DNA of 64,000 nucleotides from Macrostomum hystrix (lineage: Eukaryota; Animalia; Platyhelminthes): positions 9,176,001-9,240,000 of the forward strand of contig CATNEN010000007.1 of NCBI GenBank assembly GCA_950097015.1, given 5' to 3'. This document shows positions 4,016 to 64,000 of this stretch, in pieces. Position 1 is the first letter of the stretch. Each line of letters begins with the position of its first letter. The position numbers and the translations under genes were made by a program. The notes beneath the pieces were generated by a model. It was not told the DNA's origin and searched no databases. It saw nothing but the letters and a program-made list of their open reading frames with translations.

Positions 4016-5479
4016 GTAAATCGATTGATGTGATTCTTCGAAGCCCCAGCGCCGTTCCTGGCCGAGAGCGGTGTCGCTGGCCGTTGCTCGGTGGAAGCTG
4101 GTCACAGCCCCCATTTGGCGCCAATCAACCAAAACCATTTTCTATGCAGGTGCAGTCACTCTCGGCCTCCCAGTTCGGTGTCTCACTCCCAACTCCACTT
4201 TGTCCCCAGTCCCATGTCGCTCGGCAAACCGAAAGCCGCGGATTCTTCAGAGAGTCCCGCAGTCCTCCAGCGATCGTGCCGAAGTGGCGAACTGGCGAGG
4301 CGAACCAGCCACCCACCCGATTCCCCTGCCGTCTCTGCCAGCCCTCGGCAATGTTCCCCTCCCTAGGGTGCGAAAACTCGGCCCGGTCCGCTTCTTTTGG
4401 AGGCTCGAGCGCGGCTGCCCAGACGAGATAAGCGCGCCCAGCAACGCCTCGCCTGTCATCCCACTTTCTGACTCCCCTCCGCAGTCCGCATTCGGGTGCA
4501 TTCGCACTTTGACGCTTTGTTTCCCACATGGAGCGCCAAATCCTCTGATCCGTTACCAATTTCCGAATCCCAGTCAACTTCTTTATTGACAAATCCCCTT
4601 CATACTATAGCTGCGAAAAATCACAGAGCGTGATTATCCCGAGTCGGACAAGACGCTCAATGGATTCCTCATAGTTTCTGGCATCGGCCAGCATGAAAAT
4701 TTCATGGCCGCAACAGAAGTGGTGCTTATTTAAAGTGCTTCATAAGCAAGTTGAGCGTTTTGATTTATCGGCAACATTGTGCGCAGAGCAGGATGGGATC
4801 CCGGCACCAGTTTGGCTGCGGACAAATATGCGAGAGAGGGTGGCACTAATTGATGGCCTCTATTTTTAGAAATTGCTTGCACTTGCAAAAGCAGACAAGA
4901 CAAGAGCAGAAATTGAGCAGCTGTTGCTGAAGTCATTGGGGGGAGCAAACTGTTGATGCTGGGATTGCTTGGACTGCTCAGCAGTCAAATCACAGCTCAG
5001 CTCATGCCAGGTTGAGCAGTTGATAACTAGCCGTATAATGGGCTGCCCCAGGCTTTGGCAAACTCATTCACGACACACACACAATGAGGGAATTAGGTGA
5101 AAGCACTTCACGGAGAGTTTCCGATTCCATTTTCCGAGTCGCTGAGCATGTTGCTGTCTTAGCAACAACAGTGGCAAAATAGCGGAGAACATATGAGCAG
5201 GCAGGAGTGGAGTTAGGCAAGAGGCCGAATGGCACAGATAACAGGCGTGATGGCTTTGGATGACAGCTCCGCGTCTGTGCTCAAATGGAGAATTTATATT
5301 AATGGGACAGCGAGATGGGAAGAAAGTAGGTCAGTTCAGAGTAATGGGGAAGGGGAGACTGGAGGATTGATGGGGAATGAGAGGGAGAGAGTCAGAGGCC
5401 GAATGAGGAGAGAAATAGGGAACAGGGAGAGAGGGAGAGGAATCGAAAGAAGAGCGCGGTTGGAAGAGTGAGAGAAGTA

Positions 5480-5803
5480 GAGAGGGACAGAGGGACAGAG
5501 GGGCAGAGGGGCAGAGGGACAGAGGGGCAGAGGGACAGAGGGACAGGGGGGCAGAGGGACAGAGGGGCAGAGGGACAGGGGGGCAGAGGGACAGAGGGAC
5601 AGGGGGGCAGAGGGACAGAGGGACAGGGGGGCAGAGGGACAGAGGGACAAGGGGGCAGAGGGACAGAGGGGCAGAGGGACATGGATAGAGGGAAAGAGGG
5701 ACAGAGGGACAGAGGGACAGAGGGGCAGAGGGACAGAGGGGCAGAGGGGCAGAGGGACAGAGGGGCAGAGGGGCAGAGGGACAGAGGGGCAGAGGGACAG
5801 AGG
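5480..5803. repeat. 8-bp purine repeat AGAGGGAC/AGAGGGGC
   Basis: Tandem copies. Confidence 0.92.
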
Positions 5804-6442
5804 AACGGATATAGGGATTTAATCGCCTTTTAAACAATATTTGGAATATCAATCGATGCTGTCAGAACTCGCAGCAAACCGGGGAAGTTCTTCCAATGGT
5901 TCTTTCAATTCTTCCAAGGGCTTCTCCAATACGGAGCATTTTCGGTGGAGTTTCGAACTGGCAGAGTGAAGGCGCTAAGGCCACTTAGTCAGTTCCAGCC
6001 TAACGGAATGCGAGACCCAAGGGCTGGGTGGGAGGGAAAATATCACGGCTAAAAAATGCTTTCGCTGCACTTTTCCCTGGAGCCATCATCGTTCTCCTGT
6101 CTGTTGCTTTTGGCGGGAATTTTTGGTGCGGTAAAAGTGGAGAGGGATCGAGAGAACAGGTTGAGCTAACAGACTGGCCAAGGATGGGCAGCTCACATGG
6201 GATAACTGGCTGGAGAGGGGAAGAGCTTGCGCTGGGATGCCGGGGCGCGATGGTGGGTTTGAGGTGGCGTCTAATGGACCGATCTGTCTCTCATCTGTCT
6301 TGCTCTCAGACTGCAGCACCAGATTCTGCTGGGCTGGCCAGAGAGTCTCGAAATCAGCAGCCAGCGCTGGGACTCACGTGACGATTGAAACAGCCGCTGC
6401 CAGATTTCATGCCTGCTAGTAACGACTTCTACATGACTTTTC

Positions 6443-48287: not shown

Positions 48288-50093
48288 TGATGTCCCAGTT
48301 TTTTTCATTACTGACTGGTCCAAGCCGGATCATTAAGCGGTACGCTGATTGCATTCATGGCTCTCTTATTGCCCTGGATTTTCGCCTTTTTGCTAGTAAA
48401 TTTCTCCAACAGAATCGACTAACATCGAAGAACCGCGGACACCTTTCGCTCGTAGAAAGAGGCTGCAATAGAAATGATTCGAATGAAACCGGCCTGAAGA
48501 CTAACCGAATGCGACTGATTAGGAACAGCAAAACAGGAGCAATATTGGCTGAGAAAGAATGGGGTCAGACAGACAGACCGGAGAGAGCGAAAGAGGGTGT
48601 GAAAACTTGAGGGCGCAAATGTCGGGGTTAAAAGCGATCGATAAATAATGGGGAAGAGAATTGAGGGGTTAGGTCAGGCTGGAGCCTGGAGGGGGTTTGG
48701 CGTGAACAGGGGGCTGGGGGAAATCGACAATCGATATTGCGCGGACGGGGCAGGGGCTAGAGAAGAAAGGGCACAAAGCGATAGTAGGATTGACTGACCA
48801 ATACAATATAGCACCAATTTACCCTCCGTACGTTTCCGCTACATATTGTGTACCTGTCTGAGCTCTCTCTCGTTTTTAGTGCCGCAACTACGCGCTCGTA
48901 CTTAGCCCCTAGAAGTTAGAGCAGCTCTAAATGAATATTTCAAGCCCTGTTAAAGACCAGCTATCATTCCAGGGTCCGCGTCTGCTTTTACATGTAATTG
49001 GCAAGTGCAATGCTCTAGTGCAAAGACTTTTTCTGCCAGATTTTTTCGACGTTCGTGCCCGCACATTTGCTGTCTATTCACCCGAGTCTTTTATAATACT
49101 CAACAAAGAGGACTCGATCCTCTCAAGAGCATTAGCGCCCCCCTGCTCCGTGTTATTTCCCAATTACCTCCCTTCCTGCTCGAGAGTTTCTTGCACTTTC
49201 ATTCTTGCACAAAATTGAACACTCGATAATTAGATATGAAGGCGCATAAGAGGGCCTTGCACGCGATCGCTCTGGCTTTGAAGGGACGGATGAAGGCCTG
49301 GCTAGCGGGCTACACTGGCAATGTAGCGGTCGCTCTAGCTTCCATCAAGGCTAGCGCAAATCTCAACCAGCTGTGTATCTGGTTACATTTATTCGGAGCA
49401 ACACTATATCTGGCTATCATGAGCGAGGGGTCTGCGTACCCTCAGCAACCCCAAATATTCACCGCAGTAACTCAGGTGTCATAGTCAAGACAGTCAATAA
49501 CTTGGCCCTGCAAAGTGTTAAATCCCAGAGTAAAAGCAGTCCCTTTGGTGCAACCTGACCTCTAACCCGAATAACTGTACTGTACACAAATAATGCCGTT
49601 GAGGAGACGGTTTGGGCTCCAAATCTGCTTTCAAAGCTGATCCCACTTGTGCATCTGCCAGTTCTAAAGTTAATATTCACAGTGCGTCCCAGCTCGATTT
49701 GTTTATCGATGCTTCAAACACCCAAGTACTGCAGCAAGATGTGGGAGCTGCGCACAGACTTAGATGCACACTTTTGTCACATTTCAACAGAAGTCACATT
49801 AAATAACCACAGGTTAGCACAAAATCCATCGAAAATTGCTTTTAGCACCGAATTTTCTCTTATACTGATCCTTGTTAAATTAGAGTATTTCCCGTTTGAC
49901 ATTGCTACGGCTGTTACTAGACTGCAGTAGCTAAGCTATTTTTACAGTCTACACAAGTGTAGAATGCTTGTGCCACAAATATTTCAATACCTTCGATTGA
50001 TGACCTGCTAGTTTCCTTTGTCCGACCCTGGAATGTACTCGTAACCGCTTGATAGTCGGAATCATTATATACTTCTAATAAATAAATTGTATT

Positions 50094-50427
50094 TGTTGTG
50101 GGTTTCGTTACGATAATTCCGTAAATAGTTTTCTAGAACTTTCTACCACTTGTTATAACACTCTGTTGTTTCCAGAATCTTCTCTGCGCCTCCCCCGCGG
50201 GCTATCTATGAGAACTTTCTAGAAAGTTCTCCCACTCGCTCCCCAGGCTATAAATAGAAACCCCCGCGCGGTGCGCACACTCAAAACCACTTTCCAGTAT
50301 TTAATAATACTGCTGTTACAAATATACGCTTATCCAGTCGACTGCCGAGTGCTCCTTTCGGCGCTATACTTACATTTACCAACACTACAATTGGAATCTC
50401 TGTATTCGTTACTTCAAGAATACAACA
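50094..50427 (+). repeat. 5' LTR
   Basis: TGTTGTGGG...TACAACA; identical by eye to 54828-55161. Confidence 0.96.
50130..50256 (+). promoter_or_regulatory. LTR promoter: three heat-shock elements plus TATA box
   Basis: tTTCtaGAActTTCt 50130-50144; tTTCcaGAAtcTTCt 50169-50183; aGAActTTCtaGAAagTTCt 50211-50230; TATAAATA 50249-50256. Confidence 0.8.
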
Positions 50428-50436
50428 GGGATTTTC

Positions 50437-50454
50437 TGGCGTCGCAAGCAGGAT
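50437..50454 (+). other. Primer binding site (probably tRNA-Ser)
   Basis: TGGCGTCGCAAGCAGGAT, 9 nt after the 5' LTR; complements ...ATCCTG..GACG-CCA type tRNA-Ser 3' ends. Confidence 0.7.
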
Positions 50455-50526
50455 CTTGATCAACTTCGAGGACGTCTAATCTACAACGACTGTCACTATT
50501 GACCGAAGGATCAAGCTACTACAATC

Positions 50527-53500
50527 ATGCCCGAAACGATGCAAGACGAGGACATAATCAGCCTCCTACGGCAGCAGATGGAAGAAGAGCGCCAACAGCG
50601 GAACGCTGACCGGCAGATGATGCTCGACCTCATTCGGTCTCTAAAGCCTGCAGCGGACCAGTCCCAGGCTGCAGCTTTGCCGACACATGTGACGACGTCG
50701 ACTCCGGGTTTCTCGCCATTCGACGCCACGTCCGAGCTCTGGCCCGACTACTTGGCCAGATTCTGCACCTTCACGGGCGCGAACTCCATACCCGACGACA
50801 AGAAGGCTCAGGTGTTCCTGACGAACCAGTCTCCGTCTGTCTACAAGCTTCTCTCAAACTTGGCAGCGCAGCAGACGCCGCGGAAGGAGATCAACAAGCT
50901 CACTATGGACGAGATTGAGAAGTTCATGGAAGAACAGTATGACACCAAGCGCTTCATCGTGCGGGAGCGTTTCCGGTTCTGGAGCGACATGCGGCGGAAA
51001 CCGGGTGAGACGATCCAGGAAATGGCTGCGAGAATCCGCCAGGATGCAACCACCTGCGATTTCTCTTCCATCAAAGATCCACTGGACGAGGCGCTGCGCA
51101 CGCGTTTCATCTGCTCAGTGAGGAACGAAGCAGTACTCAAAGCTTTGTTCAAATTAAAGGTGGAAGAGCTCACGTTCGCCCGGGCTGTCGAGATCGCCAT
51201 CGAGACAGAGGAAGCCGCCCGAGTCGCCAAGGAGACGGTTTACGGCGACAAATCCAGCCCCGTAAACAAGGTTAAGCAGAAGGTTCGGCGACCCGGAGCC
51301 ACTTCGGCGAAATTTACGACAGATTCTACTGCTTCCAGGTCTACTACTGACTCTGCGTCTGGTTCGTGCTACCGCTGCGGAGCGAAGAACCATCGGGCAA
51401 ACGATTGCCGATTCAATGACGCGACCTGCCGGCACTGCAAAAAGGTGGGTCACCTAGAATCTGTCTGCCGTTCCAAGGCCAAAGGATCTGCCCCTGCGGC
51501 GAACTTCAAGAAGCCAGTGAAACAGGTCGAGGAGCATGTGCTTGTACATGCTGTAGCCCGAACCGAGGACGACCTGCCTAAGCTGGAAGTGTCGATCCAC
51601 ATCCAAGGCAAGGCTCTCGCCATCGAGGTCGACACTGCGACAAACGGCAACTTCATCACAGAGTCATTCTGGAAGAAGCTGGGGACGCCGCCGCTCGAAG
51701 TAGCGATGTCACGCTACGAGTCCGCCAGCCGACACGACTTACCTGTACTAGGTACCTTCGTCGGGAAAACGACATTGCCTGGCTCGGCTCATGAGCACGA
51801 CATCCAGTACATCGTCACACAGGTGCCCGGCTTGAATCTACTCGGCCGGACCGCCACGAAGCTGTTGGGAATCTCCGTCGACAAACTGCTCGGCGCTGCC
51901 AGCGTCATTCAAGAAGTCAACGCAGTGTTTGACCACCTGCCGCCGGACGAGGCTCTTCAAAAGGCCTGCCGAAATCTTTGCGACGAATTCCCGGACCTGT
52001 GGAAGGACGAGCTGGGTTGCCTCAAGGACTTCAAGCTCGAGTTGCAGTTTAACCCGGATGCAAAGCCGGTGTTCCGGAAGGCTAGGCCTGTCCCCTTCGC
52101 CATCCGCGAGGAGCTCGAGCGCGCCTACGACGAGGGCATCAGGAGAGGCATCTGGGAGCCTACTGACTTCAATGACTACGGGACGCCCGTGGTCCCCGTG
52201 CGAAAGCCCTCGACCGGCTCAGAGCAGCCGAAACTGCGAGTCTGCGGAGACTACTCGTGCACTATCAACCCGCAGCTGGAAGACAACCGTCACCCGCTGC
52301 CCCTCCCAGAGGAACTGCTACAGAAGCTGGGAGGCAGCTACTGCTTCTCAAAGGTAGATCTGGCCGACGCCTACAACCAGATCGAGTTGGGACCGATGAG
52401 TCAGAGGCGCCTGGCACTGAGCACCCACCGGGGTGTGCTTCTTCAGAAGCGGCTCGCTTTCGGCCCGAAGTCTGCAGTGGGTGAGTTCCAGTTCATCATG
52501 GAAATGGTAGCCGGTGATCTGCCCGGAGTCGTTTTCTACTTGGACGACTACCTGGTCGGCGGCGCGACCGCTGATGAGCATCTCGCAAACCTACGCCGGC
52601 TTTTCCAACGCCTTTCTGACAAGGGACTTCGCTGCCGACGGGAGAAGTGCAAATTCGCCATGCCCAGCATCGAGTACCTTGGCTATGTACTGTCAAAAGA
52701 AGGCATCGCCAAGGGAACCAAGGTGGACGCTGTCCGCGAAATGCCTCCACCAAAGGACGTGTCCAGCCTCCGGTCATTCCTCGGCTCGGTCCAGTTCTAC
52801 GCGAAGTTTCTGCCGCCAAGCATGGCCACGATCTCCGAGCCGCTGTACCGGCTCACCAGGAGGGACACACCGTGGACCTGGAAAGACGCAGAGCAGCGGG
52901 CCTTCGACCAGATCAAGGAGGAGCTCTCGTCGGACAACGTGCTGGTCCACTACAATGCCGACCTCCCTCTCGGGCTCTCCTGCGACGCATCCAACGTCGG
53001 GATCGGCGCCGTCCTGTTCCACCGCTACCCGGATGGTAGCGAGCGGCCGATCGCCAACGCTTCAAAGTCTCTGACGGATGCTCAGCGCCGCTATCCTCAG
53101 ATTCAGAAGGAAGCCCTTTCAATCATCTTCGGCCTAAAGAAGTTTTTCCAATACTTGTTCAACCGCAAGTTCATCCTGGTCACGGACCATAAGCCGTTGA
53201 TTTCTCTATTCGGGCCCGAGAAGGAGACACCAGTGATGGCGGCAAACCGACTGGCTCGTTGGGCGAACCTGCTCCACAATTTCACCTACGAAATCGAGTA
53301 CCGCCAGACGAAGAGTCACGGAAATGCGGACGCCCTGAGTCGCCTGCCAGTCGGAGACGACCTAGACTTCGACGGGGAGGAGAGCACAGCCGACTTCGAC
53401 ATGGTCTGTGCGATCAAGGTCCTGAGCCTGCAGATCCGGCCGGCTGACGCCTCAGCCGTAGCCAAGGAATCATCGAGGGACCCAGTCATCTCCACCGCCA

Positions 53501-54789
53501 TGCGCTACTGTCGAGAAGGTTGGCCGCCAATCGGACGAGACGAGGACGCTGAGCTGGCCCGCCTGCGGAAGGTCAAAGATTCGCTGTCCTGCTGCAACGG
53601 ATGTCTTCTGCATGGCTGTCGTCTTGTGATTCCTCGGAACCTCCGGAATGAGGTGCTGAAAATCCTCCACCTCGGACACTTTGGAATACAGAGGATGAAG
53701 CAGCTGGCTCGATCGGCAGTCTACTGGCCGAACATCGACGACGACGTCGAGCACCTGTGCCACGGCTGCCACAGCTGTGCTGAGCACCAAAATCATCCGC
53801 CAAAGGCCGCCGTCCATCCGTGGATGATGCCTGAGAAGCCTTGGAGTCGCCTACATCTGGATCACGCAGTCAACTTCCTCGGCACCAACTGGCTAGTGCT
53901 CACGGACGCCTACTCGAAGTACCCGTGCATACACCCGACGCAATCCATGTCAACGCGGGCAACGATCGAGCTTCTGGAAGAAGACTTCGCCCACTTCGGC
54001 TACCCTCACGCCATCGTCACAGACAATGCAGCGGCATTCATGGCTGAGGAGTTTCAAGCTTGGTGTCGCGAACACGGCATCGCGCACCTCACAGGAGCTC
54101 CGTATCATCCTGCAACAAACGGAGCGGCCGAACGACTGGTTCAGACCTTCAAGAAGGCCCTGAAGAAATCCAGCCTGCCACCTGCCAGGGCGCTACAGCA
54201 GTTCCTGATGCAGTACCGACGGACTCCTGCGGTCAACGGCTACTCTCCGAGCGAACTCCTAAATGGCCGGCAGATCAGGACGCAGATTGATACTCTGCTG
54301 CCATCTCCAGCCCATCTCGCCCAGGATCGCCAAGTCAAGCAGGCCGAAGAGTCCAGAGCTCGGAAAAAGGTGTCTCGCGTCCGAGAAGGCTACAACGTCG
54401 GAGATCCGGTCTACGCTCGCTACTACGGACCACGCCGCGAGAAGGAAGGCCGCTGGGTTCCGGCAGTGGTCACCAAGCGGCACGGCAGCCGCAGCGTCAA
54501 CGTCAAGGTTGTCCCAAGCGGCCCGGTGTGGCGACGGCACTTCGACCAGCTTCAACCGCGACACGTGTCCGCGGAAGACAGCGAGCCAGGATCACTGCCG
54601 ACTCAACAAAACGAAACGGCCGGCCACCTGATGCTGCCGGCCACACCAGCGGTGGCACATCCAGGATCTCGACCCAGGCCTCCAGGATGGCGAGCGCCGG
54701 ACCAAGTCCAACACCCGCCGCCCTACGGACCAGATAATCCACGACGGTCGGCTAGGCAGCGAAAGCCACGGCTACAAATGGACTTATAG
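50527..54789 (+). CDS. Gag-Pol polyprotein, single ORF, 1420 aa
   Basis: Two CCHC knuckles (CYRCGAKNHRANDC, CRHCKKVGHLESVC); protease VDTA; RT YLDD; RNase H CDAS...TDHKPL; integrase HHCC plus D,D,E. Confidence 0.96.
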   Translation: MPETMQDEDIISLLRQQMEEERQQRNADRQMMLDLIRSLKPAADQSQAAALPTHVTTSTPGFSPFDATSELWPDYLARFCTFTGANSIPDDKKAQVFLTNQSPSVYKLLSNLAAQQTPRKEINKLTMDEIEKFMEEQYDTKRFIVRERFRFWSDMRRKPGETIQEMAARIRQDATTCDFSSIKDPLDEALRTRFICSVRNEAVLKALFKLKVEELTFARAVEIAIETEEAARVAKETVYGDKSSPVNKVKQKVRRPGATSAKFTTDSTASRSTTDSASGSCYRCGAKNHRANDCRFNDATCRHCKKVGHLESVCRSKAKGSAPAANFKKPVKQVEEHVLVHAVARTEDDLPKLEVSIHIQGKALAIEVDTATNGNFITESFWKKLGTPPLEVAMSRYESASRHDLPVLGTFVGKTTLPGSAHEHDIQYIVTQVPGLNLLGRTATKLLGISVDKLLGAASVIQEVNAVFDHLPPDEALQKACRNLCDEFPDLWKDELGCLKDFKLELQFNPDAKPVFRKARPVPFAIREELERAYDEGIRRGIWEPTDFNDYGTPVVPVRKPSTGSEQPKLRVCGDYSCTINPQLEDNRHPLPLPEELLQKLGGSYCFSKVDLADAYNQIELGPMSQRRLALSTHRGVLLQKRLAFGPKSAVGEFQFIMEMVAGDLPGVVFYLDDYLVGGATADEHLANLRRLFQRLSDKGLRCRREKCKFAMPSIEYLGYVLSKEGIAKGTKVDAVREMPPPKDVSSLRSFLGSVQFYAKFLPPSMATISEPLYRLTRRDTPWTWKDAEQRAFDQIKEELSSDNVLVHYNADLPLGLSCDASNVGIGAVLFHRYPDGSERPIANASKSLTDAQRRYPQIQKEALSIIFGLKKFFQYLFNRKFILVTDHKPLISLFGPEKETPVMAANRLARWANLLHNFTYEIEYRQTKSHGNADALSRLPVGDDLDFDGEESTADFDMVCAIKVLSLQIRPADASAVAKESSRDPVISTAMRYCREGWPPIGRDEDAELARLRKVKDSLSCCNGCLLHGCRLVIPRNLRNEVLKILHLGHFGIQRMKQLARSAVYWPNIDDDVEHLCHGCHSCAEHQNHPPKAAVHPWMMPEKPWSRLHLDHAVNFLGTNWLVLTDAYSKYPCIHPTQSMSTRATIELLEEDFAHFGYPHAIVTDNAAAFMAEEFQAWCREHGIAHLTGAPYHPATNGAAERLVQTFKKALKKSSLPPARALQQFLMQYRRTPAVNGYSPSELLNGRQIRTQIDTLLPSPAHLAQDRQVKQAEESRARKKVSRVREGYNVGDPVYARYYGPRREKEGRWVPAVVTKRHGSRSVNVKVVPSGPVWRRHFDQLQPRHVSAEDSEPGSLPTQQNETAGHLMLPATPAVAHPGSRPRPPGWRAPDQVQHPPPYGPDNPRRSARQRKPRLQMDL

Positions 54790-54817: not shown

Positions 54818-54827
54818 GGTGGGGAGG
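54818..54827 (+). other. Polypurine tract
   Basis: GGTGGGGAGG immediately before the 3' LTR. Confidence 0.8.
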
Positions 54828-55161
54828 TGTTGTGGGTTTCGTTACGATAATTCCGTAAATAGTTTTCTAGAACTTTCTACCACTTGTTATAACACTCTGT
54901 TGTTTCCAGAATCTTCTCTGCGCCTCCCCCGCGGGCTATCTATGAGAACTTTCTAGAAAGTTCTCCCACTCGCTCCCCAGGCTATAAATAGAAACCCCCG
55001 CGCGGTGCGCACACTCAAAACCACTTTCCAGTATTTAATAATACTGCTGTTACAAATATACGCTTATCCAGTCGACTGCCGAGTGCTCCTTTCGGCGCTA
55101 TACTTACATTTACCAACACTACAATTGGAATCTCTGTATTCGTTACTTCAAGAATACAACA
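54828..55161 (+). repeat. 3' LTR
   Basis: Direct repeat of the 5' LTR, preceded by the PPT and followed by the TSD. Confidence 0.96.
54864..54990 (+). promoter_or_regulatory. Second copy of the 3x HSE + TATA module (3' LTR)
   Basis: Same motifs, offset +4734. Confidence 0.78.
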
Positions 55162-57008
55162 GTATTAAGGTACTGTGAGATTATAGATTGTTAATATAAA
55201 TTAAAATCTGGCGTGAATTCACTGAATTATTTACGAGTTGCTGTCCAGCATCTGGGCAGATCTAAGCCGAGAATATTGCGCAAGTGATTCCACTTCACAG
55301 CTTTTATGAGTCGAGTTTGTGCTGGACCATTTGCCATTCTAGCCGGTATCTGGGTCAATATCTTTGAATTGCCAATCAAGGCACTTGAAGCAGATAAAAT
55401 TCAACTGAACTGATTCGCGCTCATAAGACACCTGCCGCCAGTGCGGCCCCAACCTGCAGTGCGCAGTTGCACTCAGTTGCAATCTAGCGTGGGCAACTTG
55501 TGTTCTGAATAATGTTGCGAAAAATGGCTGAAAAAACAGTGCGGGAGACAGCAGCTCTGGCACGGCCTCTCATTACTAACCCGATGTGCCGCGTTAAAGT
55601 GCATGACGACGCAGCCTTGAAGGAGCTGCAGGCCCGCAGAGCACTCTCCAATTACCCGGTGGAAGCCGCCCCGGCGACTTTCAAATTAAGCAAAGAAAAA
55701 CCCGGGCAGCAGACAGCCTGCGTGCTCCAATCTGTCCCGCAGGATGGAGAGGCCACAGATGCATGAGAGGCGGCGTCCCTTTGAGAAACTCGCTACGAAC
55801 TTAATGGCAACGGAGTTCGGTGTCTCAGATGCGCCCGCTTTTACAACCGGCATGCAGCGGGCTTTGGACGCGAGAGATTATTTTATTATTTTATGGCGGA
55901 CTCGGCCTTGCTTAGTTACCTAACTAGCTTATTCCTGGGCCTGTGGCTTCCTGTTGGCGGCCTTTTAACATTAAGGCTAGTTCGCATGCTCTGCCTTTTG
56001 GGCTGAACTGACTGCTGCGACTTTCATCCTGATTATCCTGACCACAAACAATTTATATTCTAATACCAATGTAGGATCATTGTATTGCACTAAATCAATA
56101 ATTATGCCCTTATCCCAATTTATAAATTTATTGCTTAAAAATGACAGTTAAAATGACAATCTGACTTTTGTAGAAGCATTTAAATTTCTTTTCTAGCATA
56201 TCGAGTTTGCAGCTTTACCAAATGAGTGTAGTGTATTGCTACTAATGAGTAGTTTAACAATTAAGCCTTTTTAAATAAAGAAGAAAATACGACAAAGACA
56301 AACCTATATGCACATGTGACTGTATTCTAGAATAATGCCTCGGAGTTTGTGTACTTGAACAGTAAAAAATTGCGTCAAGGCCCGCAGGTAACACAGAAAG
56401 CGAAGCACTTTCCTATATTAAAGCACTTCTATCACAAAAATTTGAGGTTGTCGGCATCCATTAAAATACAAAATACTTCATCGCATCTGCTCAGCTTGAG
56501 TTCAATAGCTAGTAGCATTGTGTACTATCCGAATTAGAAGGCGAGAAACAGACAAAAAATAACTACGAGTACAAGGTAAACAAAAGTAGAGAAGTTTGAT
56601 AGGCCAAAGCGGATTAACAAGAGCAGAAGAGCAGAAGATGCAGTTGTAACTAAGCAGAGGAATTAGCCTGTAGCAGAAGATATTGTTACACAAAAAAGAC
56701 AAGTGGCGCTACTGCGTGGCTGCTTTGCCATCCTGGCTACTTGAAGTAGCGCAGTGTGCGGCAAACTGGGGCTGCGATAGGCAGGGGTGATTTAACACAG
56801 ATTTGCACAGTACAAAATTTCATTTGCTATGCATTTGGAAATCTCAAGTAATCAAGACGATTGTGCAGAGCTACATTGCAAATGAGAATACCTCTGTACT
56901 TAAATAGTTTTTAACATTCACGAGAACAAAGCTTTTTTGGGAAAGCGTGTTTTGGGGGCTCTTTAACAACGAAAAAACAAGTACCTACCTCTTCTAGCGA
57001 CCTCTAGA

Positions 57009-57283
57009 CCATAGACTATTAGCATTTTAAATACCGACAGATTGAAATCCCGTTGCCACACAAATCAGACGTTGGCCCATAGACTATTAGAATTTCAACT
57101 ACCGACAGATGGAAATCCCCCTGCCACACAAATGAGACGTTGGCCCATAGACTATTAGAATTTCAACTACCGACAGATGGAAATCCCGCTGCCACACAAA
57201 TGAGACGTTGGCCCATAGACTATTAGAATTTCAACTACCGACAGATGGAAATCCCGCTGCCACACAAATGAGACGTTGCCCAT
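57009..57283. repeat. 68-bp tandem repeat, 4 copies (innexin 3' region)
   Basis: CCATAGACTATTAGAATTTCAACTACCGACAG... at 68-bp spacing. Confidence 0.9.
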
Positions 57284-60406: not shown

Positions 60407-61357
<951 letters not shown>

Positions 61358-61690
61358 TGGGATACAATATTGAAGTTCGTGTCTGTACCGCGGGCCGGAG
61401 GTTGCCTCTAGAAAGTGCATTACATTTTATTGCTCGCAATGCATGGCTTATTTGCCACTATTGGATGAAGATATCTGGATACGATGTCTCACGGGACACT
61501 GCAGGTCAGCCCCATGGAGTTGGGGTTTTATTATGCCCCAGCCCGTGCATTATCCCAGAAGCAGCCACTGCCTGGCAATATCCACAGCAAACACTCTTTG
61601 ATCCCTGATCGGCCGGTGTCGCTGCCAGCCGGGGTCAAGCAAATATTCGGTAGCTAATTTCCCTTGAGGGGCCGCTACACCAGCTTCCCC

Positions 61691-61893
<203 letters not shown>

Positions 61894-63047
61894 CGAGTAT
61901 ATGTCTATCTATCTATCTATCTATCTGTCTGTCTGTCTATCCAGGTGTGACTAAAACCTGCCACTGAGCTAGAAGTTCATCTCGGGCAGCCAGCCAGACA
62001 GCAACCTCAGCCACCCAGCAGCCGACAGTTCAATCAGCGGTGCAGGCGGGGTGTCTGCGGGGACCCGAAGTCGGTCTTCCCTCCCACTCCGCCAAATCCC
62101 GGCAACAAAAGTTGGGGATAAAAATAGATTTGCAGCGTTAAGAGGCCGCGCGCTAACGGCCTTCCCTTTAAAAGGGAAGATTTTTGGAAGAAGTTTAGCG
62201 GCCTCAGAAACTACTTCTTGTTATGGGGGCCGAGGGGAGGAGAGGCAAGGAAGGGAAGAATGCTAAATAGACGCCGCCGCGTCAGTCTCCCGGAGATCGC
62301 TGGAATCGGCACCGAGAATCTCTATCTCTACCCGCCCAGGCTGGCTGCAGCGGTGGGGTGGGGGTGCAGCGATGAGGCGGTGCCTGACTAAGCCAGGACT
62401 TGCAGGCTGGGGAAAGGAAGGGGGAGAGCGGGGGGAGGAGACAGCGTACAAGTTTTCCCATTTTTACTCTCTGGATTTCTTCACGTCAGCTTGCATGTTG
62501 GCTCACGCTGCAGGGCGACACGGCGAATGCCGCGGGGGCCCCACGGCTGGGGCTTGGCAAACCTGGGAAAAAGCAAACTGCCAGGGCCTCGGTGACTCAG
62601 GCCATGCGCTGGGGGAGGGGGTGGGGTGCCTGGCAACTCCGCCGCGCTGACTCACGACTAGCGGGGGTCCGGGATCGGTAAATCCCTTCGCGCACTTTGG
62701 CACGCAGGTCAGTCCAAGTCGCTTTGAAGTAGATTAGCGAGCCTTTCCCGACTGCCTGTCTGCGATGTTGACCGGGCCAAATCGTTTGCTCGCTGGCTGC
62801 TCAAACTGAAGACTAAGTGTAGCTTTGACTGTCTCTATTAGTGAGTTTCTGTATGTTTCTGCCGCGGCCAAGTAATTTCTTGCTTGTTGCCTCCCCATTA
62901 TTTGCTTAGCAGTTTTCCATGCCGTTTCCCCTGAGCTGAGTACCCCGGTAGCTCGCCTTAACTTTGCACCGATCAGCTAAGGAGCTCTAGATGAGTGGAC
63001 CGAAAACTCCTCACATAGTGGCGGGTTGGCTATTCAATATCGGGTGC

Positions 63048-64000
63048 ATCTTGTCTGCCCGTTCTGAGTGTCTGTCTGCCCGCTCTGAGTGTCTTGTCTG
63101 CCCGCTCTGAGTGTCTTGTCTGCCCGTTCTGAGTGTCTTGTCTGCCTGTTCTGAGTGTCTTGTCGGCCTGTTCTGAGTGTCTTGTCTGTCGGTTCTGAGT
63201 GTCTTGTCTGCCCGCTCTGAGTGTCTTGTCTGCCCGTTCTGAGTGTCTTGTCTGCCCGTTCTGAGTGTCTTGTCTGCCCGTTCTGAGTGTCTTGTCTGCC
63301 CGTTCTGAGTGTCTTGTCTGCCCGTTCTGAGTGTCTTGTCTGTCTGTTCTGAGTGTCTTGTCTGCCCGTTCTGAGTGTCTTGTCTGTCTGTTCTGAGTGT
63401 CTTGTCTGTCTGTTCTGAGTGTCTGTCTGTCTGTTGTGAGTGTCTTGTCCGCCCGTTCTCAGCGTCTTGTCTGCCCGTTCTGAGTGTCTTGTCTGCCCGT
63501 TCTGAGTGTCTTGTCTGTCTGTTCTGAGTGTCTTGTCTGTCTGTTCTGCGTGGCTTGTCTGTCTGTTCTGAGTGTCTTGTCTGTCTGTTCTGAGCGTCTT
63601 GTCTGCCCGTTCTGAGTGTCTTGTCTGTCTGTTCTGAGCGTCTTGTCTGCCCGTTCTGAGTGTCTTGTCTGCCCGTTCTGAGTGTCTTGTCTGCCTGTTC
63701 TGAGTGTCTTGTCGGCCTGTTCTGAGTGTCTTGTCTGTCGGTTCTGAGTGTCTTGTCTGCCCGCTCTGAGTGTCTTGTCTGCCCGTTCTGAGTGTCTTGT
63801 CTGCCCGTTCTGAGTGTCTTGTCTGCCCGTTCTGAGTGTCTTGTCTGCCCGTTCTGAGTGTCTTGTCTGTCTGTTCTGAGTGTCTTGTCTGCCCGTTCTG
63901 AGTGTCTTGTCTGTCTGTTCTGAGTGTCTTGTCTGTCTGTTCTGAGTGTCTGTCTGTCTGTTGTGAGTGTCTTGTCCGCCCGTTCTGAGCGTCTTATCTG
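63048..64000. repeat. 22-bp minisatellite GTCTTGTCTGCCCGTTCTGAGT (runs off the window end)
   Basis: Tandem copies. Confidence 0.95.

What the first reader, a model, noticed from the sequence alone, without database searches (positions are those of the whole stretch)
50094..50427. Retrotransposon LTR built as an hsp70-type promoter: candidate heat-shock-activated Gypsy element
Seen: U3 holds three perfect alternating nGAAn arrays. Two have 3 units (50130-50144, 50169-50183). One has 4 units (50211-50230) inside the perfect 22-bp palindrome GAGAACTTTCTAGAAAGTTCTC. They are about 40 bp apart, and the last lies 18 bp upstream of TATAAATA. Known: such arrays bind HSF trimers, a proximal HSE next to TATA is the hsp70 architecture, and the plant Copia element ONSEN is heat-activated through LTR HSEs. 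Inference: this animal Mag-like Gypsy has independently recruited host HSF1, so it would mobilise under proteotoxic stress and spread heat-inducible promoters through the genome.
Basis: partly seen in the sequence, partly recalled or inferred. Interest (0 to 1): 0.88.

Follow-up and report, generated by a model that had tools for sequence, protein, structure and literature searches.

The report
Heat-shock promoter in flatworm retrotransposon LTR
The end repeat of a young, intact jumping gene in a Macrostomum flatworm genome is laid out like the worm's own hsp70 heat-shock promoter, a trick already shown by experiment in the sister species M. lignano in 2025, so this is a real but known kind of element.

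Summary
The 334-bp LTR (50094-50427, identical to 54828-55161) carries perfect heat-shock-element (HSE) arrays of 3, 3 and 4 units. The last array ends 18 bp before TATAAATA. Every perfect HSE in the 64-kb window lies in these two LTRs.

The element is an intact 5,068-bp Ty3/Gypsy retrotransposon with a 5-bp target duplication and one 1,420-aa gag-pol frame. The genome has about 53 LTRs of this family, with no old copies seen.

The host is a Macrostomum flatworm; the assembly's size and contig count fit M. hystrix. Its four intronless hsp70 genes show the same 3+3+4 HSE layout before a TATA box. At least four HSF-domain loci exist.

This kind is already published. In M. lignano, a Mag family with three HSEs is induced more than 250-fold by heat, and mutating the HSEs kills an LTR reporter (Mob DNA 2025).

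Three points here go beyond that paper:
- the hsp70 mimicry;
- a hypervariable spot about 30 nt past the TATA, probably the transcription start;
- HSE-TATA modules in relatives at 55-65% identity from marine metagenomes.

No expression data could be obtained. The scan had noted other copies of this LTR elsewhere in this genome.

The parts
50089..50093 (.). 5' target-site duplication GTATT
   Evidence: Same 5 bases at 55162-55166
50094..50427 (+). 5' LTR, 334 bp, TGTTG...CAACA
   Evidence: 100% identical to 54828-55161. About 53 copies in the genome.
50130..50144 (.). HSE 1: three perfect alternating nGAAn/nTTCn units
   Evidence: Its 15-mer is the reverse complement of the distal HSE of hsp70 genes L035 and L038. 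The only variant among 30 LTRs is spacer base 50134.
50169..50183 (.). HSE 2: three perfect units
   Evidence: Invariant in 30 LTRs.
50210..50231 (.). HSE 3: four perfect units (50211-50230) inside a 22-bp palindrome; the proximal HSE
   Evidence: Its start is 38 bp before the TATA box. The host hsp70 proximal 4-unit HSE starts 33 bp before its TATA box.
50249..50256 (+). TATA box TATAAATA
   Evidence: It lies 18 bp after HSE 3. The gap is 13 bp in hsp70 and 19 bp in the second Gypsy family.
50283..50289 (+). Hypervariable A/C/G stretch, inferred U3/R junction (transcription start), 27-33 nt after the TATA box
   Evidence: There are 10 variants among 16 elements. Both LTRs carry the same variant in 14 of 16. 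Reading this as the transcription start is an inference.
50437..50455 (+). Primer-binding site TGGCGTCGCAAGCAGGATC
   Evidence: Complementary to the 3' end of a tRNA-like gene in the same genome, L154 1498-1591. Relatives keep TGGCG at the same place.
50527..54789 (+). Single gag-pol reading frame, 1,420 aa: two CCHC knuckles, protease, RT, RNase H, integrase
54818..54827 (+). Polypurine tract GGTGGGGAGG abutting the 3' LTR
   Evidence: The same GGGGAGG-TGTT junction is present in metagenome relatives.
54828..55161 (+). 3' LTR with the same three HSE arrays (54864-54878, 54903-54917, 54945-54964) and TATA box (54983-54990)
55162..55166 (.). 3' target-site duplication GTATT

Best explanation
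The stretch is the 5' LTR of a very recently inserted, structurally intact Ty3/Gypsy (Ty3/Mdg4) LTR retrotransposon. It belongs to the single-ORF group that NCBI labels 'K02A2.6-like', probably the Mag clade. The host is a Macrostomum flatworm, most likely M. hystrix.

Its U3 region is a compact copy, in layout, of the host's inducible hsp70 promoter. Arrays of 3, 3 and 4 HSE units sit about four helical turns apart, followed by a TATA box. After heat or other proteotoxic stress, host HSF trimers would bind these arrays and drive RNA polymerase II from a start about 30 nt past the TATA box. That makes the full-length genomic RNA, which is both the gag-pol mRNA and the template for reverse transcription.

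Shown here:
- the anatomy of the element;
- the match to the host hsp70 layout;
- the presence of HSF genes;
- the youth of the family, and intact HSEs in all copies examined.

Shown elsewhere, in M. lignano, for a Mag family with three HSEs: heat induction above 250-fold and dependence on the HSEs.

Inferred: that this element in this species behaves the same way, the position of the transcription start, and any link between heat and new insertions.
For: Anatomy: identical LTRs, a target duplication, PBS, PPT and one 1,420-aa frame with RT, RNase H and integrase.

HSE excess: 8 matches against 0.78 expected in the window, all in the LTRs.

Host comparison: four intronless hsp70 genes carry HSEs of 3, 3 and 4 units at -180/-99/-33 from TATAAAAG. 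The LTR carries them at -119/-80/-38 from TATAAATA. At least four HSF DNA-binding-domain loci exist.

Family state:
- The 22-bp palindrome occurs at 53 sites, and all 50 sites that were listed are perfect.
- 17 copies were examined. All have perfect 5-bp target duplications, LTR pairs differing by 0-1 mismatch and 0-2 gap positions, and every HSE intact.
- About half of them keep an open frame of at least 1,425 codons.

A replication-linked hot spot lies 27-33 nt after the TATA box.

Comparative evidence:
- A second Gypsy family with 29% aa identity has 3+4+3 HSE units and a TATAAATA 19 bp downstream.
- In metagenome relatives, perfect HSEs number 15 in 19.5 kb of 3' flank against 5 in 222.6 kb of coding sequence.
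- L074 has 4+3+3 HSE units before a TATA box. L058, L059, L105 and L068 have an HSE 9-12 bp before a TATA box.

Experiment in the sister species: PMC12801592.
Against: Identity with the tested M. lignano family Mlig-id115 could not be checked, because its sequence is not in the held text.

The copies are 98-100% identical, so HSE conservation within the family is not by itself a test: 0 core changes were seen where about 1.4 were expected.

In M. lignano, two Copia families with one HSE each were not heat-induced. An HSE alone is therefore not sufficient.

The M. lignano reporter appeared silent in the gonads. Heat-driven transcription therefore need not lead to heritable insertions.
Confidence: 0.85

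Rival explanations
1. The HSEs are real HSF sites, but their selected role is not stress. HSF activity in embryos, stem cells or the germ line at normal temperature gives the element expression where new copies can be inherited. Heat induction would then be a by-product.
For: In M. lignano the LTR reporter can be activated in embryos, though that was after heat. From general knowledge, HSF has developmental roles in other animals. The family is clearly successful in the germ line, with about 53 near-identical LTRs.
Against: The layout copies the stress-inducible intronless hsp70 genes unit for unit. The M. lignano reporter showed signal only after heat and seemed absent from the gonads.
Confidence: 0.08
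2. The LTR captured a piece of a host hsp70 promoter by recombination or read-through, rather than building HSEs of its own.
For: The unit counts match (3, 3, 4). A 16-mer, TTTTCTAGAACTTTCT, is shared with the distal HSE of hsp70 genes L035 and L038. CTATAAA(T)AGAA is shared around the TATA box.
Against: Outside the HSE units there is no alignable similarity between the LTR and 600 bp upstream of any of the four hsp70 genes. The spacings also differ: 39/42 bp against 81/66 bp. Relatives in other samples carry HSEs with different spacer bases in otherwise unalignable LTRs.
Confidence: 0.04
3. The HSE-like arrays are a chance or purely structural feature, for example a palindrome used by integrase or in reverse transcription, with no role in transcription.
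For: The proximal array is a perfect 22-bp palindrome.
Against: Shuffles expect about 0.004 perfect HSEs per LTR, yet four overlapping matches are seen. The arrays sit just upstream of a TATA box in two unrelated LTR families and in several distant relatives. Mutation of such HSEs abolishes promoter induction in M. lignano.
Confidence: 0.02

Closest known systems
Mlig-id115|Mag and the other HSE-containing LTR retrotransposons of Macrostomum lignano (Ustyantsev et al., Mob DNA 2025, PMC12801592; preprint 10.1101/2024.12.18.629116)
   Same: Same host genus and same superfamily (Ty3/Mdg4). Canonical HSEs lie in the LTR upstream of the start, and the Mag family there has three HSEs. Copy number is in the tens. 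That paper shows induction above 250-fold at 37 C and loss of induction when the HSEs are mutated.
   Different: This copy is in a different species' assembly. The assembly's size and contig count match M. hystrix, which that paper does not mention. Sequence identity with Mlig-id115 could not be tested. That paper treats HSE gain as independent events within M. lignano families. Here, HSE-TATA modules also appear in relatives outside the genome.
ONSEN (ATCOPIA78), heat-activated Ty1/Copia element of Arabidopsis (PMC3907296)
   Same: HSEs in the LTR recruit the host heat-shock factor, so the element is transcribed after heat. This is the same working principle.
   Different: A different superfamily: Copia has integrase before RT, whereas here integrase follows RT and RNase H. 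It is also a different kingdom. ONSEN mobility has been shown in plants with impaired siRNA production. No mobility data exist for the flatworm elements.
Host inducible hsp70 promoters of the same genome (loci L035-L038)
   Same: HSE arrays of 3, 3 and 4 units. The 4-unit array lies next to the TATA box (13 bp against 18 bp). One HSE 15-mer is identical in reverse complement, within a shared 16-mer.
   Different: The LTR version is compressed: 119 bp from the first HSE to the TATA box, against 177-211 bp. It shares no sequence outside the motifs, and it drives a retrotransposon RNA rather than a chaperone.
Helitron1_CE of Caenorhabditis elegans (HSE-carrying rolling-circle transposon, cited in PMC12801592)
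   Same: An animal transposable element that carries HSEs and becomes HSF-dependent and heat-activated, spreading HSEs in the genome.
   Different: It is a DNA transposon, with no LTR promoter or RNA-intermediate logic.

Membership tests
LTR retrotransposon, Ty3/Gypsy (Ty3/Mdg4) superfamily | Two direct LTRs ending TG..CA, flanked by a short target-site duplication | tested here: met
   334-bp LTRs are 100% identical, read TGTTG..CAACA, and are flanked by the duplication GTATT.
LTR retrotransposon, Ty3/Gypsy (Ty3/Mdg4) superfamily | Domain order protease - RT - RNase H - integrase | tested here: met
   Pfam matches: RVT_1 at 596-721, RT_RNaseH at 785-919, Integrase_H2C2 at 1035-1089, rve at 1123-1195. 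A protease-like DTA motif lies at about residue 369.
LTR retrotransposon, Ty3/Gypsy (Ty3/Mdg4) superfamily | Primer-binding site after the 5' LTR and polypurine tract before the 3' LTR | tested here: met
   The PBS at 50437-50455 matches the 3' end of a tRNA-like gene. The PPT GGTGGGGAGG lies at 54818-54827.
Mag clade of Ty3/Gypsy | RT groups with Mag reference elements (GyDB) in a phylogeny | not tested
   No reference Mag, CsRN1 or Gmr1 sequences were available in the tools. The only hints are the NCBI label 'K02A2.6-like' on hit P0109 and the paper's statement that most Macrostomum LTR elements are Mag.
HSE-containing, heat-inducible LTR retrotransposons of Macrostomum (PMC12801592) | Canonical HSE (nGAAnnTTCnnGAAn or its complement) in the LTR upstream of the start | tested here: met
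   Three arrays, 10 units in all, lie 18-119 bp upstream of the TATA box.
HSE-containing, heat-inducible LTR retrotransposons of Macrostomum (PMC12801592) | Strong rise of transcript level after heat stress | not testable with these tools
HSE-containing, heat-inducible LTR retrotransposons of Macrostomum (PMC12801592) | Sequence homology to the tested family Mlig-id115|Mag | not testable with these tools
   No supplementary sequence is held. The preprint text holds none of the motifs. No M. lignano protein appeared among the best 120 hits.
hsp70-type heat-shock promoter | An array of at least three alternating nGAAn units close to a TATA box, as in the host's own inducible hsp70 genes | tested here: met
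   In the LTR, the 4-unit array ends 18 bp before the TATA box. In host hsp70 genes L035-L038, the 4-unit array ends 13 bp before it, with two further 3-unit arrays upstream in both cases.
hsp70-type heat-shock promoter | Host encodes HSF; HSF binds the site | tested here: inconclusive
   At least four loci with an HSF DNA-binding domain score above the Pfam cut-off. Binding itself cannot be tested here.
ONSEN / Ty1-Copia | Integrase upstream of RT (Copia order) | tested here: not met
   Integrase follows RT and RNase H. The element works like ONSEN but is not a member.

The most novel reading that the evidence does not exclude
The HSE-TATA promoter may not be a Macrostomum invention. It may be a long-lived or repeatedly re-made hallmark of a whole sub-clade of Mag-like elements, living in many marine invertebrates. 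Relatives at 55-65% aa identity come from marine metagenomes, and the nearest named proteins come from a snail and from sponges. Heat-triggered retrotransposon transcription would then be widespread in marine animals.
Probability: 0.35. Interest if true: 0.6.

Novelty: new member of a known kind. Interest (0 to 1): 0.4.

Why it matters
The principle is that an animal Gypsy-type element hijacks the heat-shock factor through HSEs in its LTR. It was published for M. lignano in 2024-2025, so this finding does not open a new field. It still adds four things.

1. A second Macrostomum species carries such a family. The family is in a very young and probably active state, in a non-duplicated genome that is easier to work with.
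2. The LTR mimics the host hsp70 promoter unit for unit. This gives a concrete design rule for why this family is the strongest responder.
3. There is a sequence-only pointer to the transcription start.
4. HSE-TATA LTRs occur in related elements from other marine samples. This questions the view that each gain was a private event inside M. lignano.

If heat really drives new insertions, such families would link warming episodes to mutation rate in intertidal and brackish-water animals.

Tried and rejected
Tools that were not available:
The LTRs of the closest named relatives (Batillaria, Corticium, Ephydatia) could therefore not be read.
The probable third HSE-LTR family and the TTCTAGAAGTTTCTAGAA repeat were not inspected.

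Ideas rejected:
- Chance origin of the HSEs.
- Capture of an hsp70 promoter block: there is no similarity outside the motifs.
- The recurrent 5-unit HSE AGAACATTCTAGAACATTCTGGAAC as another transposon promoter. It sits before a TATA box and a HES-like bHLH reading frame, inside a multi-copy repeat longer than 3 kb.

Weak tests:
- HSE conservation within the family is not informative, because the copies are 98-100% identical.
- The tree cannot tell gains from losses. It needs at least 9 changes among 14 HSE-bearing rows and 34 HSE-free rows.
- My regular expression for the PPT-LTR junction failed on many metagenome loci. I replaced it with coordinates derived from the protein match.

Copies were only counted and described.

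Full report
**Observation.**
- There are three perfect alternating nGAAn/nTTCn arrays at 50130-50144 (3 units), 50169-50183 (3 units) and 50211-50230 (4 units).
- The third array lies inside the perfect 22-bp palindrome 50210-50231.
- TATAAATA at 50249-50256 begins 18 nt after the last unit.
- The patterns TTCNNGAANNTTC and GAANNTTCNNGAA each match 8 times in the 64-kb window. All matches fall inside 50094-50427 or its twin 54828-55161.
- Dinucleotide-preserving shuffles expect 0.78 and 0.73 matches, and none of 100 shuffles reaches 8.

**What the element is.**
- The two 334-bp copies are 100% identical, begin TGTTG and end CAACA, and are flanked by the 5-bp duplication GTATT.
- Between them lies one open frame, 50527-54789 (1,420 aa). 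It carries two CCHC knuckles, a protease-like motif, RT, RNase H, the integrase zinc domain and the integrase core, in the Ty3/Gypsy order.
- A polypurine tract, GGTGGGGAGG, abuts the 3' LTR.
- The primer-binding site TGGCGTCGCAAGCAGGATC (50437-50455) is complementary to the 3' end of a tRNA-like gene elsewhere in the genome. That gene is L154 1498-1591. ARAGORN labels it Gln(CTG), but its length of 94 nt and its long extra arm look like a class II tRNA.

**Host.**
- Neighbouring frames encode an innexin, a Bicaudal-D fragment and a rhodopsin-type GPCR.
- The innexin is 96% identical to Macrostomum lignano proteins.
- The assembly has 220,453,370 bases in 42 contigs. This is the size and contig number reported for the M. 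hystrix assembly (PMC10468722 abstract).
- The species assignment is therefore an inference from those numbers.

**The family in this genome.**
- The LTR finds at least 40 copies at 98-100% identity.
- The 22-bp palindrome occurs at 53 sites at up to 2 mismatches. All 50 listed sites are perfect, and the reversed control gives 0. They form 21 same-spacing pairs about 4.73 kb apart, plus about 11 single sites. No old, decayed copies were seen.
- I examined 17 elements. Every one has a perfect 5-bp target duplication, LTR pairs that differ by 0-1 mismatch and 0-2 gap positions, and all HSE arrays intact in both LTRs.
- About half of them keep an open frame of at least 1,425 codons. The rest are interrupted, and one carries an internal deletion.
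- This is a very recent burst or a recent arrival.
- Because the copies are so alike, the absence of any change in a GAA/TTC core among 30 LTRs is not significant. About 1.4 variable core columns were expected. The only change inside an array is spacer base 50134.

**A pointer to the transcription start.**
- Nearly all variation among LTRs sits in one short stretch, 50283-50289. It follows CACACTC directly and lies 27-33 nt after the end of the TATA box.
- There are 10 different variants among 16 elements, and both LTRs carry the same variant in 14 of 16.
- Variation that is created anew in each copy and then written into both LTRs is what one expects at the U3/R junction. This follows from established knowledge of strong-stop DNA synthesis and strand transfer.
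- I read it as indirect support for a start about 30 nt downstream of the TATA box. It is an inference, not a measurement.

**Comparison with the host's own heat-shock genes.**
- The genome has at least four loci with an HSF DNA-binding domain above the Pfam cut-off.
- It has four intronless hsp70 genes on contig 33, two of them a divergent pair.
- All four carry perfect HSE arrays of 3, 3 and 4 units, starting at about -180/-99/-33 from TATAAAAG. The 4-unit array ends 13 bp before the TATA box.
- The LTR has 3, 3 and 4 units at -119/-80/-38 from TATAAATA, with an 18-bp gap.
- HSE 1 of the LTR is the exact reverse complement of the distal hsp70 HSE in two of the four genes, L035 and L038.
- Outside the motifs the two promoters do not align. 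The likeness is therefore one of design, not a captured block.

**Other HSE carriers in the genome.**
- Four-unit HSEs are 4- to 7-fold over the reversed control genome-wide: 163 against 24, and 149 against 40.
- A second Gypsy family (L047, L048) has 257-259-bp LTRs and a 1,155-aa frame lacking the integrase core. It is only 29% identical to this element.
- That family carries arrays of 3, 4 and 3 units, and TATAAATA follows 19 bp later.
- A further motif, TTCTAGAAAATTCTAGAA, occurs 13 times, including four same-strand pairs 3.4-4.4 kb apart. This looks like a third such family, but I could not fetch it.

**Relatives elsewhere.**
- The closest proteins are only about 64% identical. They come from the snail Batillaria attramentaria and from many unnamed metagenome contigs, with sponges at about 56%.
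- I fetched 80 metagenome loci. In them, perfect 3-unit HSEs number 15 in 19.5 kb just downstream of the polyprotein, where the 3' LTR lies. There are 5 in 222.6 kb of coding sequence.
- I clustered the flanks by sequence. Five of 21 LTR lineages at 53% aa identity or more carry a perfect HSE. None of the 10 lineages at 34-42% does.
- L074 (62% identical) has arrays of 4, 3 and 3 units, the last ending 7 bp before TATATATA. L058 and L059, L105 and L068 have an HSE 9-12 bp before a TATA box.
- All of these share the GGGGAGG-TGTT junction, the ...ACAACA end and a TGGCG primer site.
- On a tree of 69 RNase H-integrase rows, HSE-bearing rows occur in every main branch of the well-supported 55-row clade that holds the window's element. 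They occur in none of the outgroups.
- The trait needs at least 9 changes on that tree, so gains and losses cannot be told apart.
- The hosts of the metagenome contigs are unknown. Some could themselves be small flatworms.

**What is already known.**
- Ustyantsev et al. (Mob DNA 2025, PMC12801592; preprint December 2024) report that LTR families of the Mag, CsRN1 and Gmr1/Osvaldo clades in M. lignano carry canonical HSEs.
- Four such families rise more than 250-fold after 2 h at 37 C.
- The LTR of the Mag family Mlig-id115 (three HSEs, 19 copies) drives a reporter after heat only when its HSEs are intact.
- The paper does not mention M. hystrix or M. cliftonense. No sequence of Mlig-id115 is held in the library, so I could not test whether the present family is its counterpart.
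- The paper also notes that direct HSF binding and mobilisation were not shown, and that the reporter seemed silent in the gonads.

**Verdict.**
The kind is already described and tested in a sister species.
- The present copy is a new member of that kind in another Macrostomum genome.
- The additions are modest but real: the unit-for-unit mimicry of host hsp70 promoters, the hot spot that marks the probable start, the extreme youth of the family, and HSE-TATA LTRs in related elements from other marine samples. The last point weakens the view of a private, one-off acquisition.
- Heat-driven transcription in this species and heat-driven transposition anywhere remain untested. The tools that could have shown transcripts were not available.
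- The scan had already noted other copies of this LTR on other pieces of the same genome. One is a solo LTR in front of a GTPase gene.

Noticed in passing
L047:1842-2098 and 5595-5851; L048:1509-1767 and 4764-5022: A second Ty3/Gypsy family in the same genome, 29% aa identical to the window's element, with a 1,155-aa frame that has no integrase core. Its 257-259-bp LTRs carry HSE arrays of 3, 4 and 3 units, then TATAAATA 19 bp downstream. Its PBS TGGCGACGAGG looks tRNA-Ser-like (from memory).
   Followed up: partly
L055:8229-8253 (also L049-L054): A 5-unit perfect HSE, AGAACATTCTAGAACATTCTGGAAC, lies about 60 bp before TATAAAAT and a HES/Hairy-like bHLH reading frame. It sits inside a repeat longer than 3 kb that is present at 20 or more places at 97-98% identity. 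This could be a heat-inducible multi-copy transcription-factor gene.
   Followed up: partly
G000 contig 1: 6367873/6372263, 10826217/10829636, 19527061/19531216; contig 7: 6776029/6780419: TTCTAGAAAATTCTAGAA occurs 13 times in the genome, including four same-strand pairs 3.4-4.4 kb apart. This is probably a third LTR family with an HSE.
   Followed up: no
G000 contig 1, e.g. 3998607, 11029619, 15625291, 15875784, 18150711: TTCTAGAAGTTTCTAGAA recurs at 10 or more single sites on contig 1 alone. This is an unidentified repeat carrying a 4-unit HSE.
   Followed up: no
L035/L036 (G000 contig 33: 3867893-3873260): Two identical intronless hsp70 genes stand head to head about 1.7 kb apart, each with its own 3+3+4 HSE promoter. 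Two more copies lie at 4.23 and 4.64 Mb on the same contig.
   Followed up: partly
window 50527-54789, residue about 369-371: The protease active-site motif reads D-T-A instead of D-T-G in all 17 copies examined. A loose pattern search suggests DTA is also common in the metagenome relatives.
   Followed up: partly
L138 (contig 31) and L139 (contig 16, 32 kb): These two copies share the target duplication GTAAC and the same hot-spot variant. The short contig 16 is probably a duplicate (haplotig) of the contig 31 region, so copy counts are slightly inflated.
   Followed up: no
L154:1498-1591: A tRNA-like gene whose 3' end, with an encoded CCA, matches the element's primer-binding site. ARAGORN calls it Gln(CTG), yet it is 94 nt long with a Ser-like extra arm and a poor acceptor stem. 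It may be a tRNA-derived repeat. The PBS 15-mer occurs 47 times exactly in the genome, more than the element's 5' ends would account for.
   Followed up: partly
window 56941-57280, 60468-61450, 61691-61900, 62941-63950: Tandem repeats lie downstream of the element: a 68-bp unit (4 copies), a 16-bp unit (about 46 registers), (CTAT)n, and a 22-bp unit (about 33 registers).
   Followed up: no
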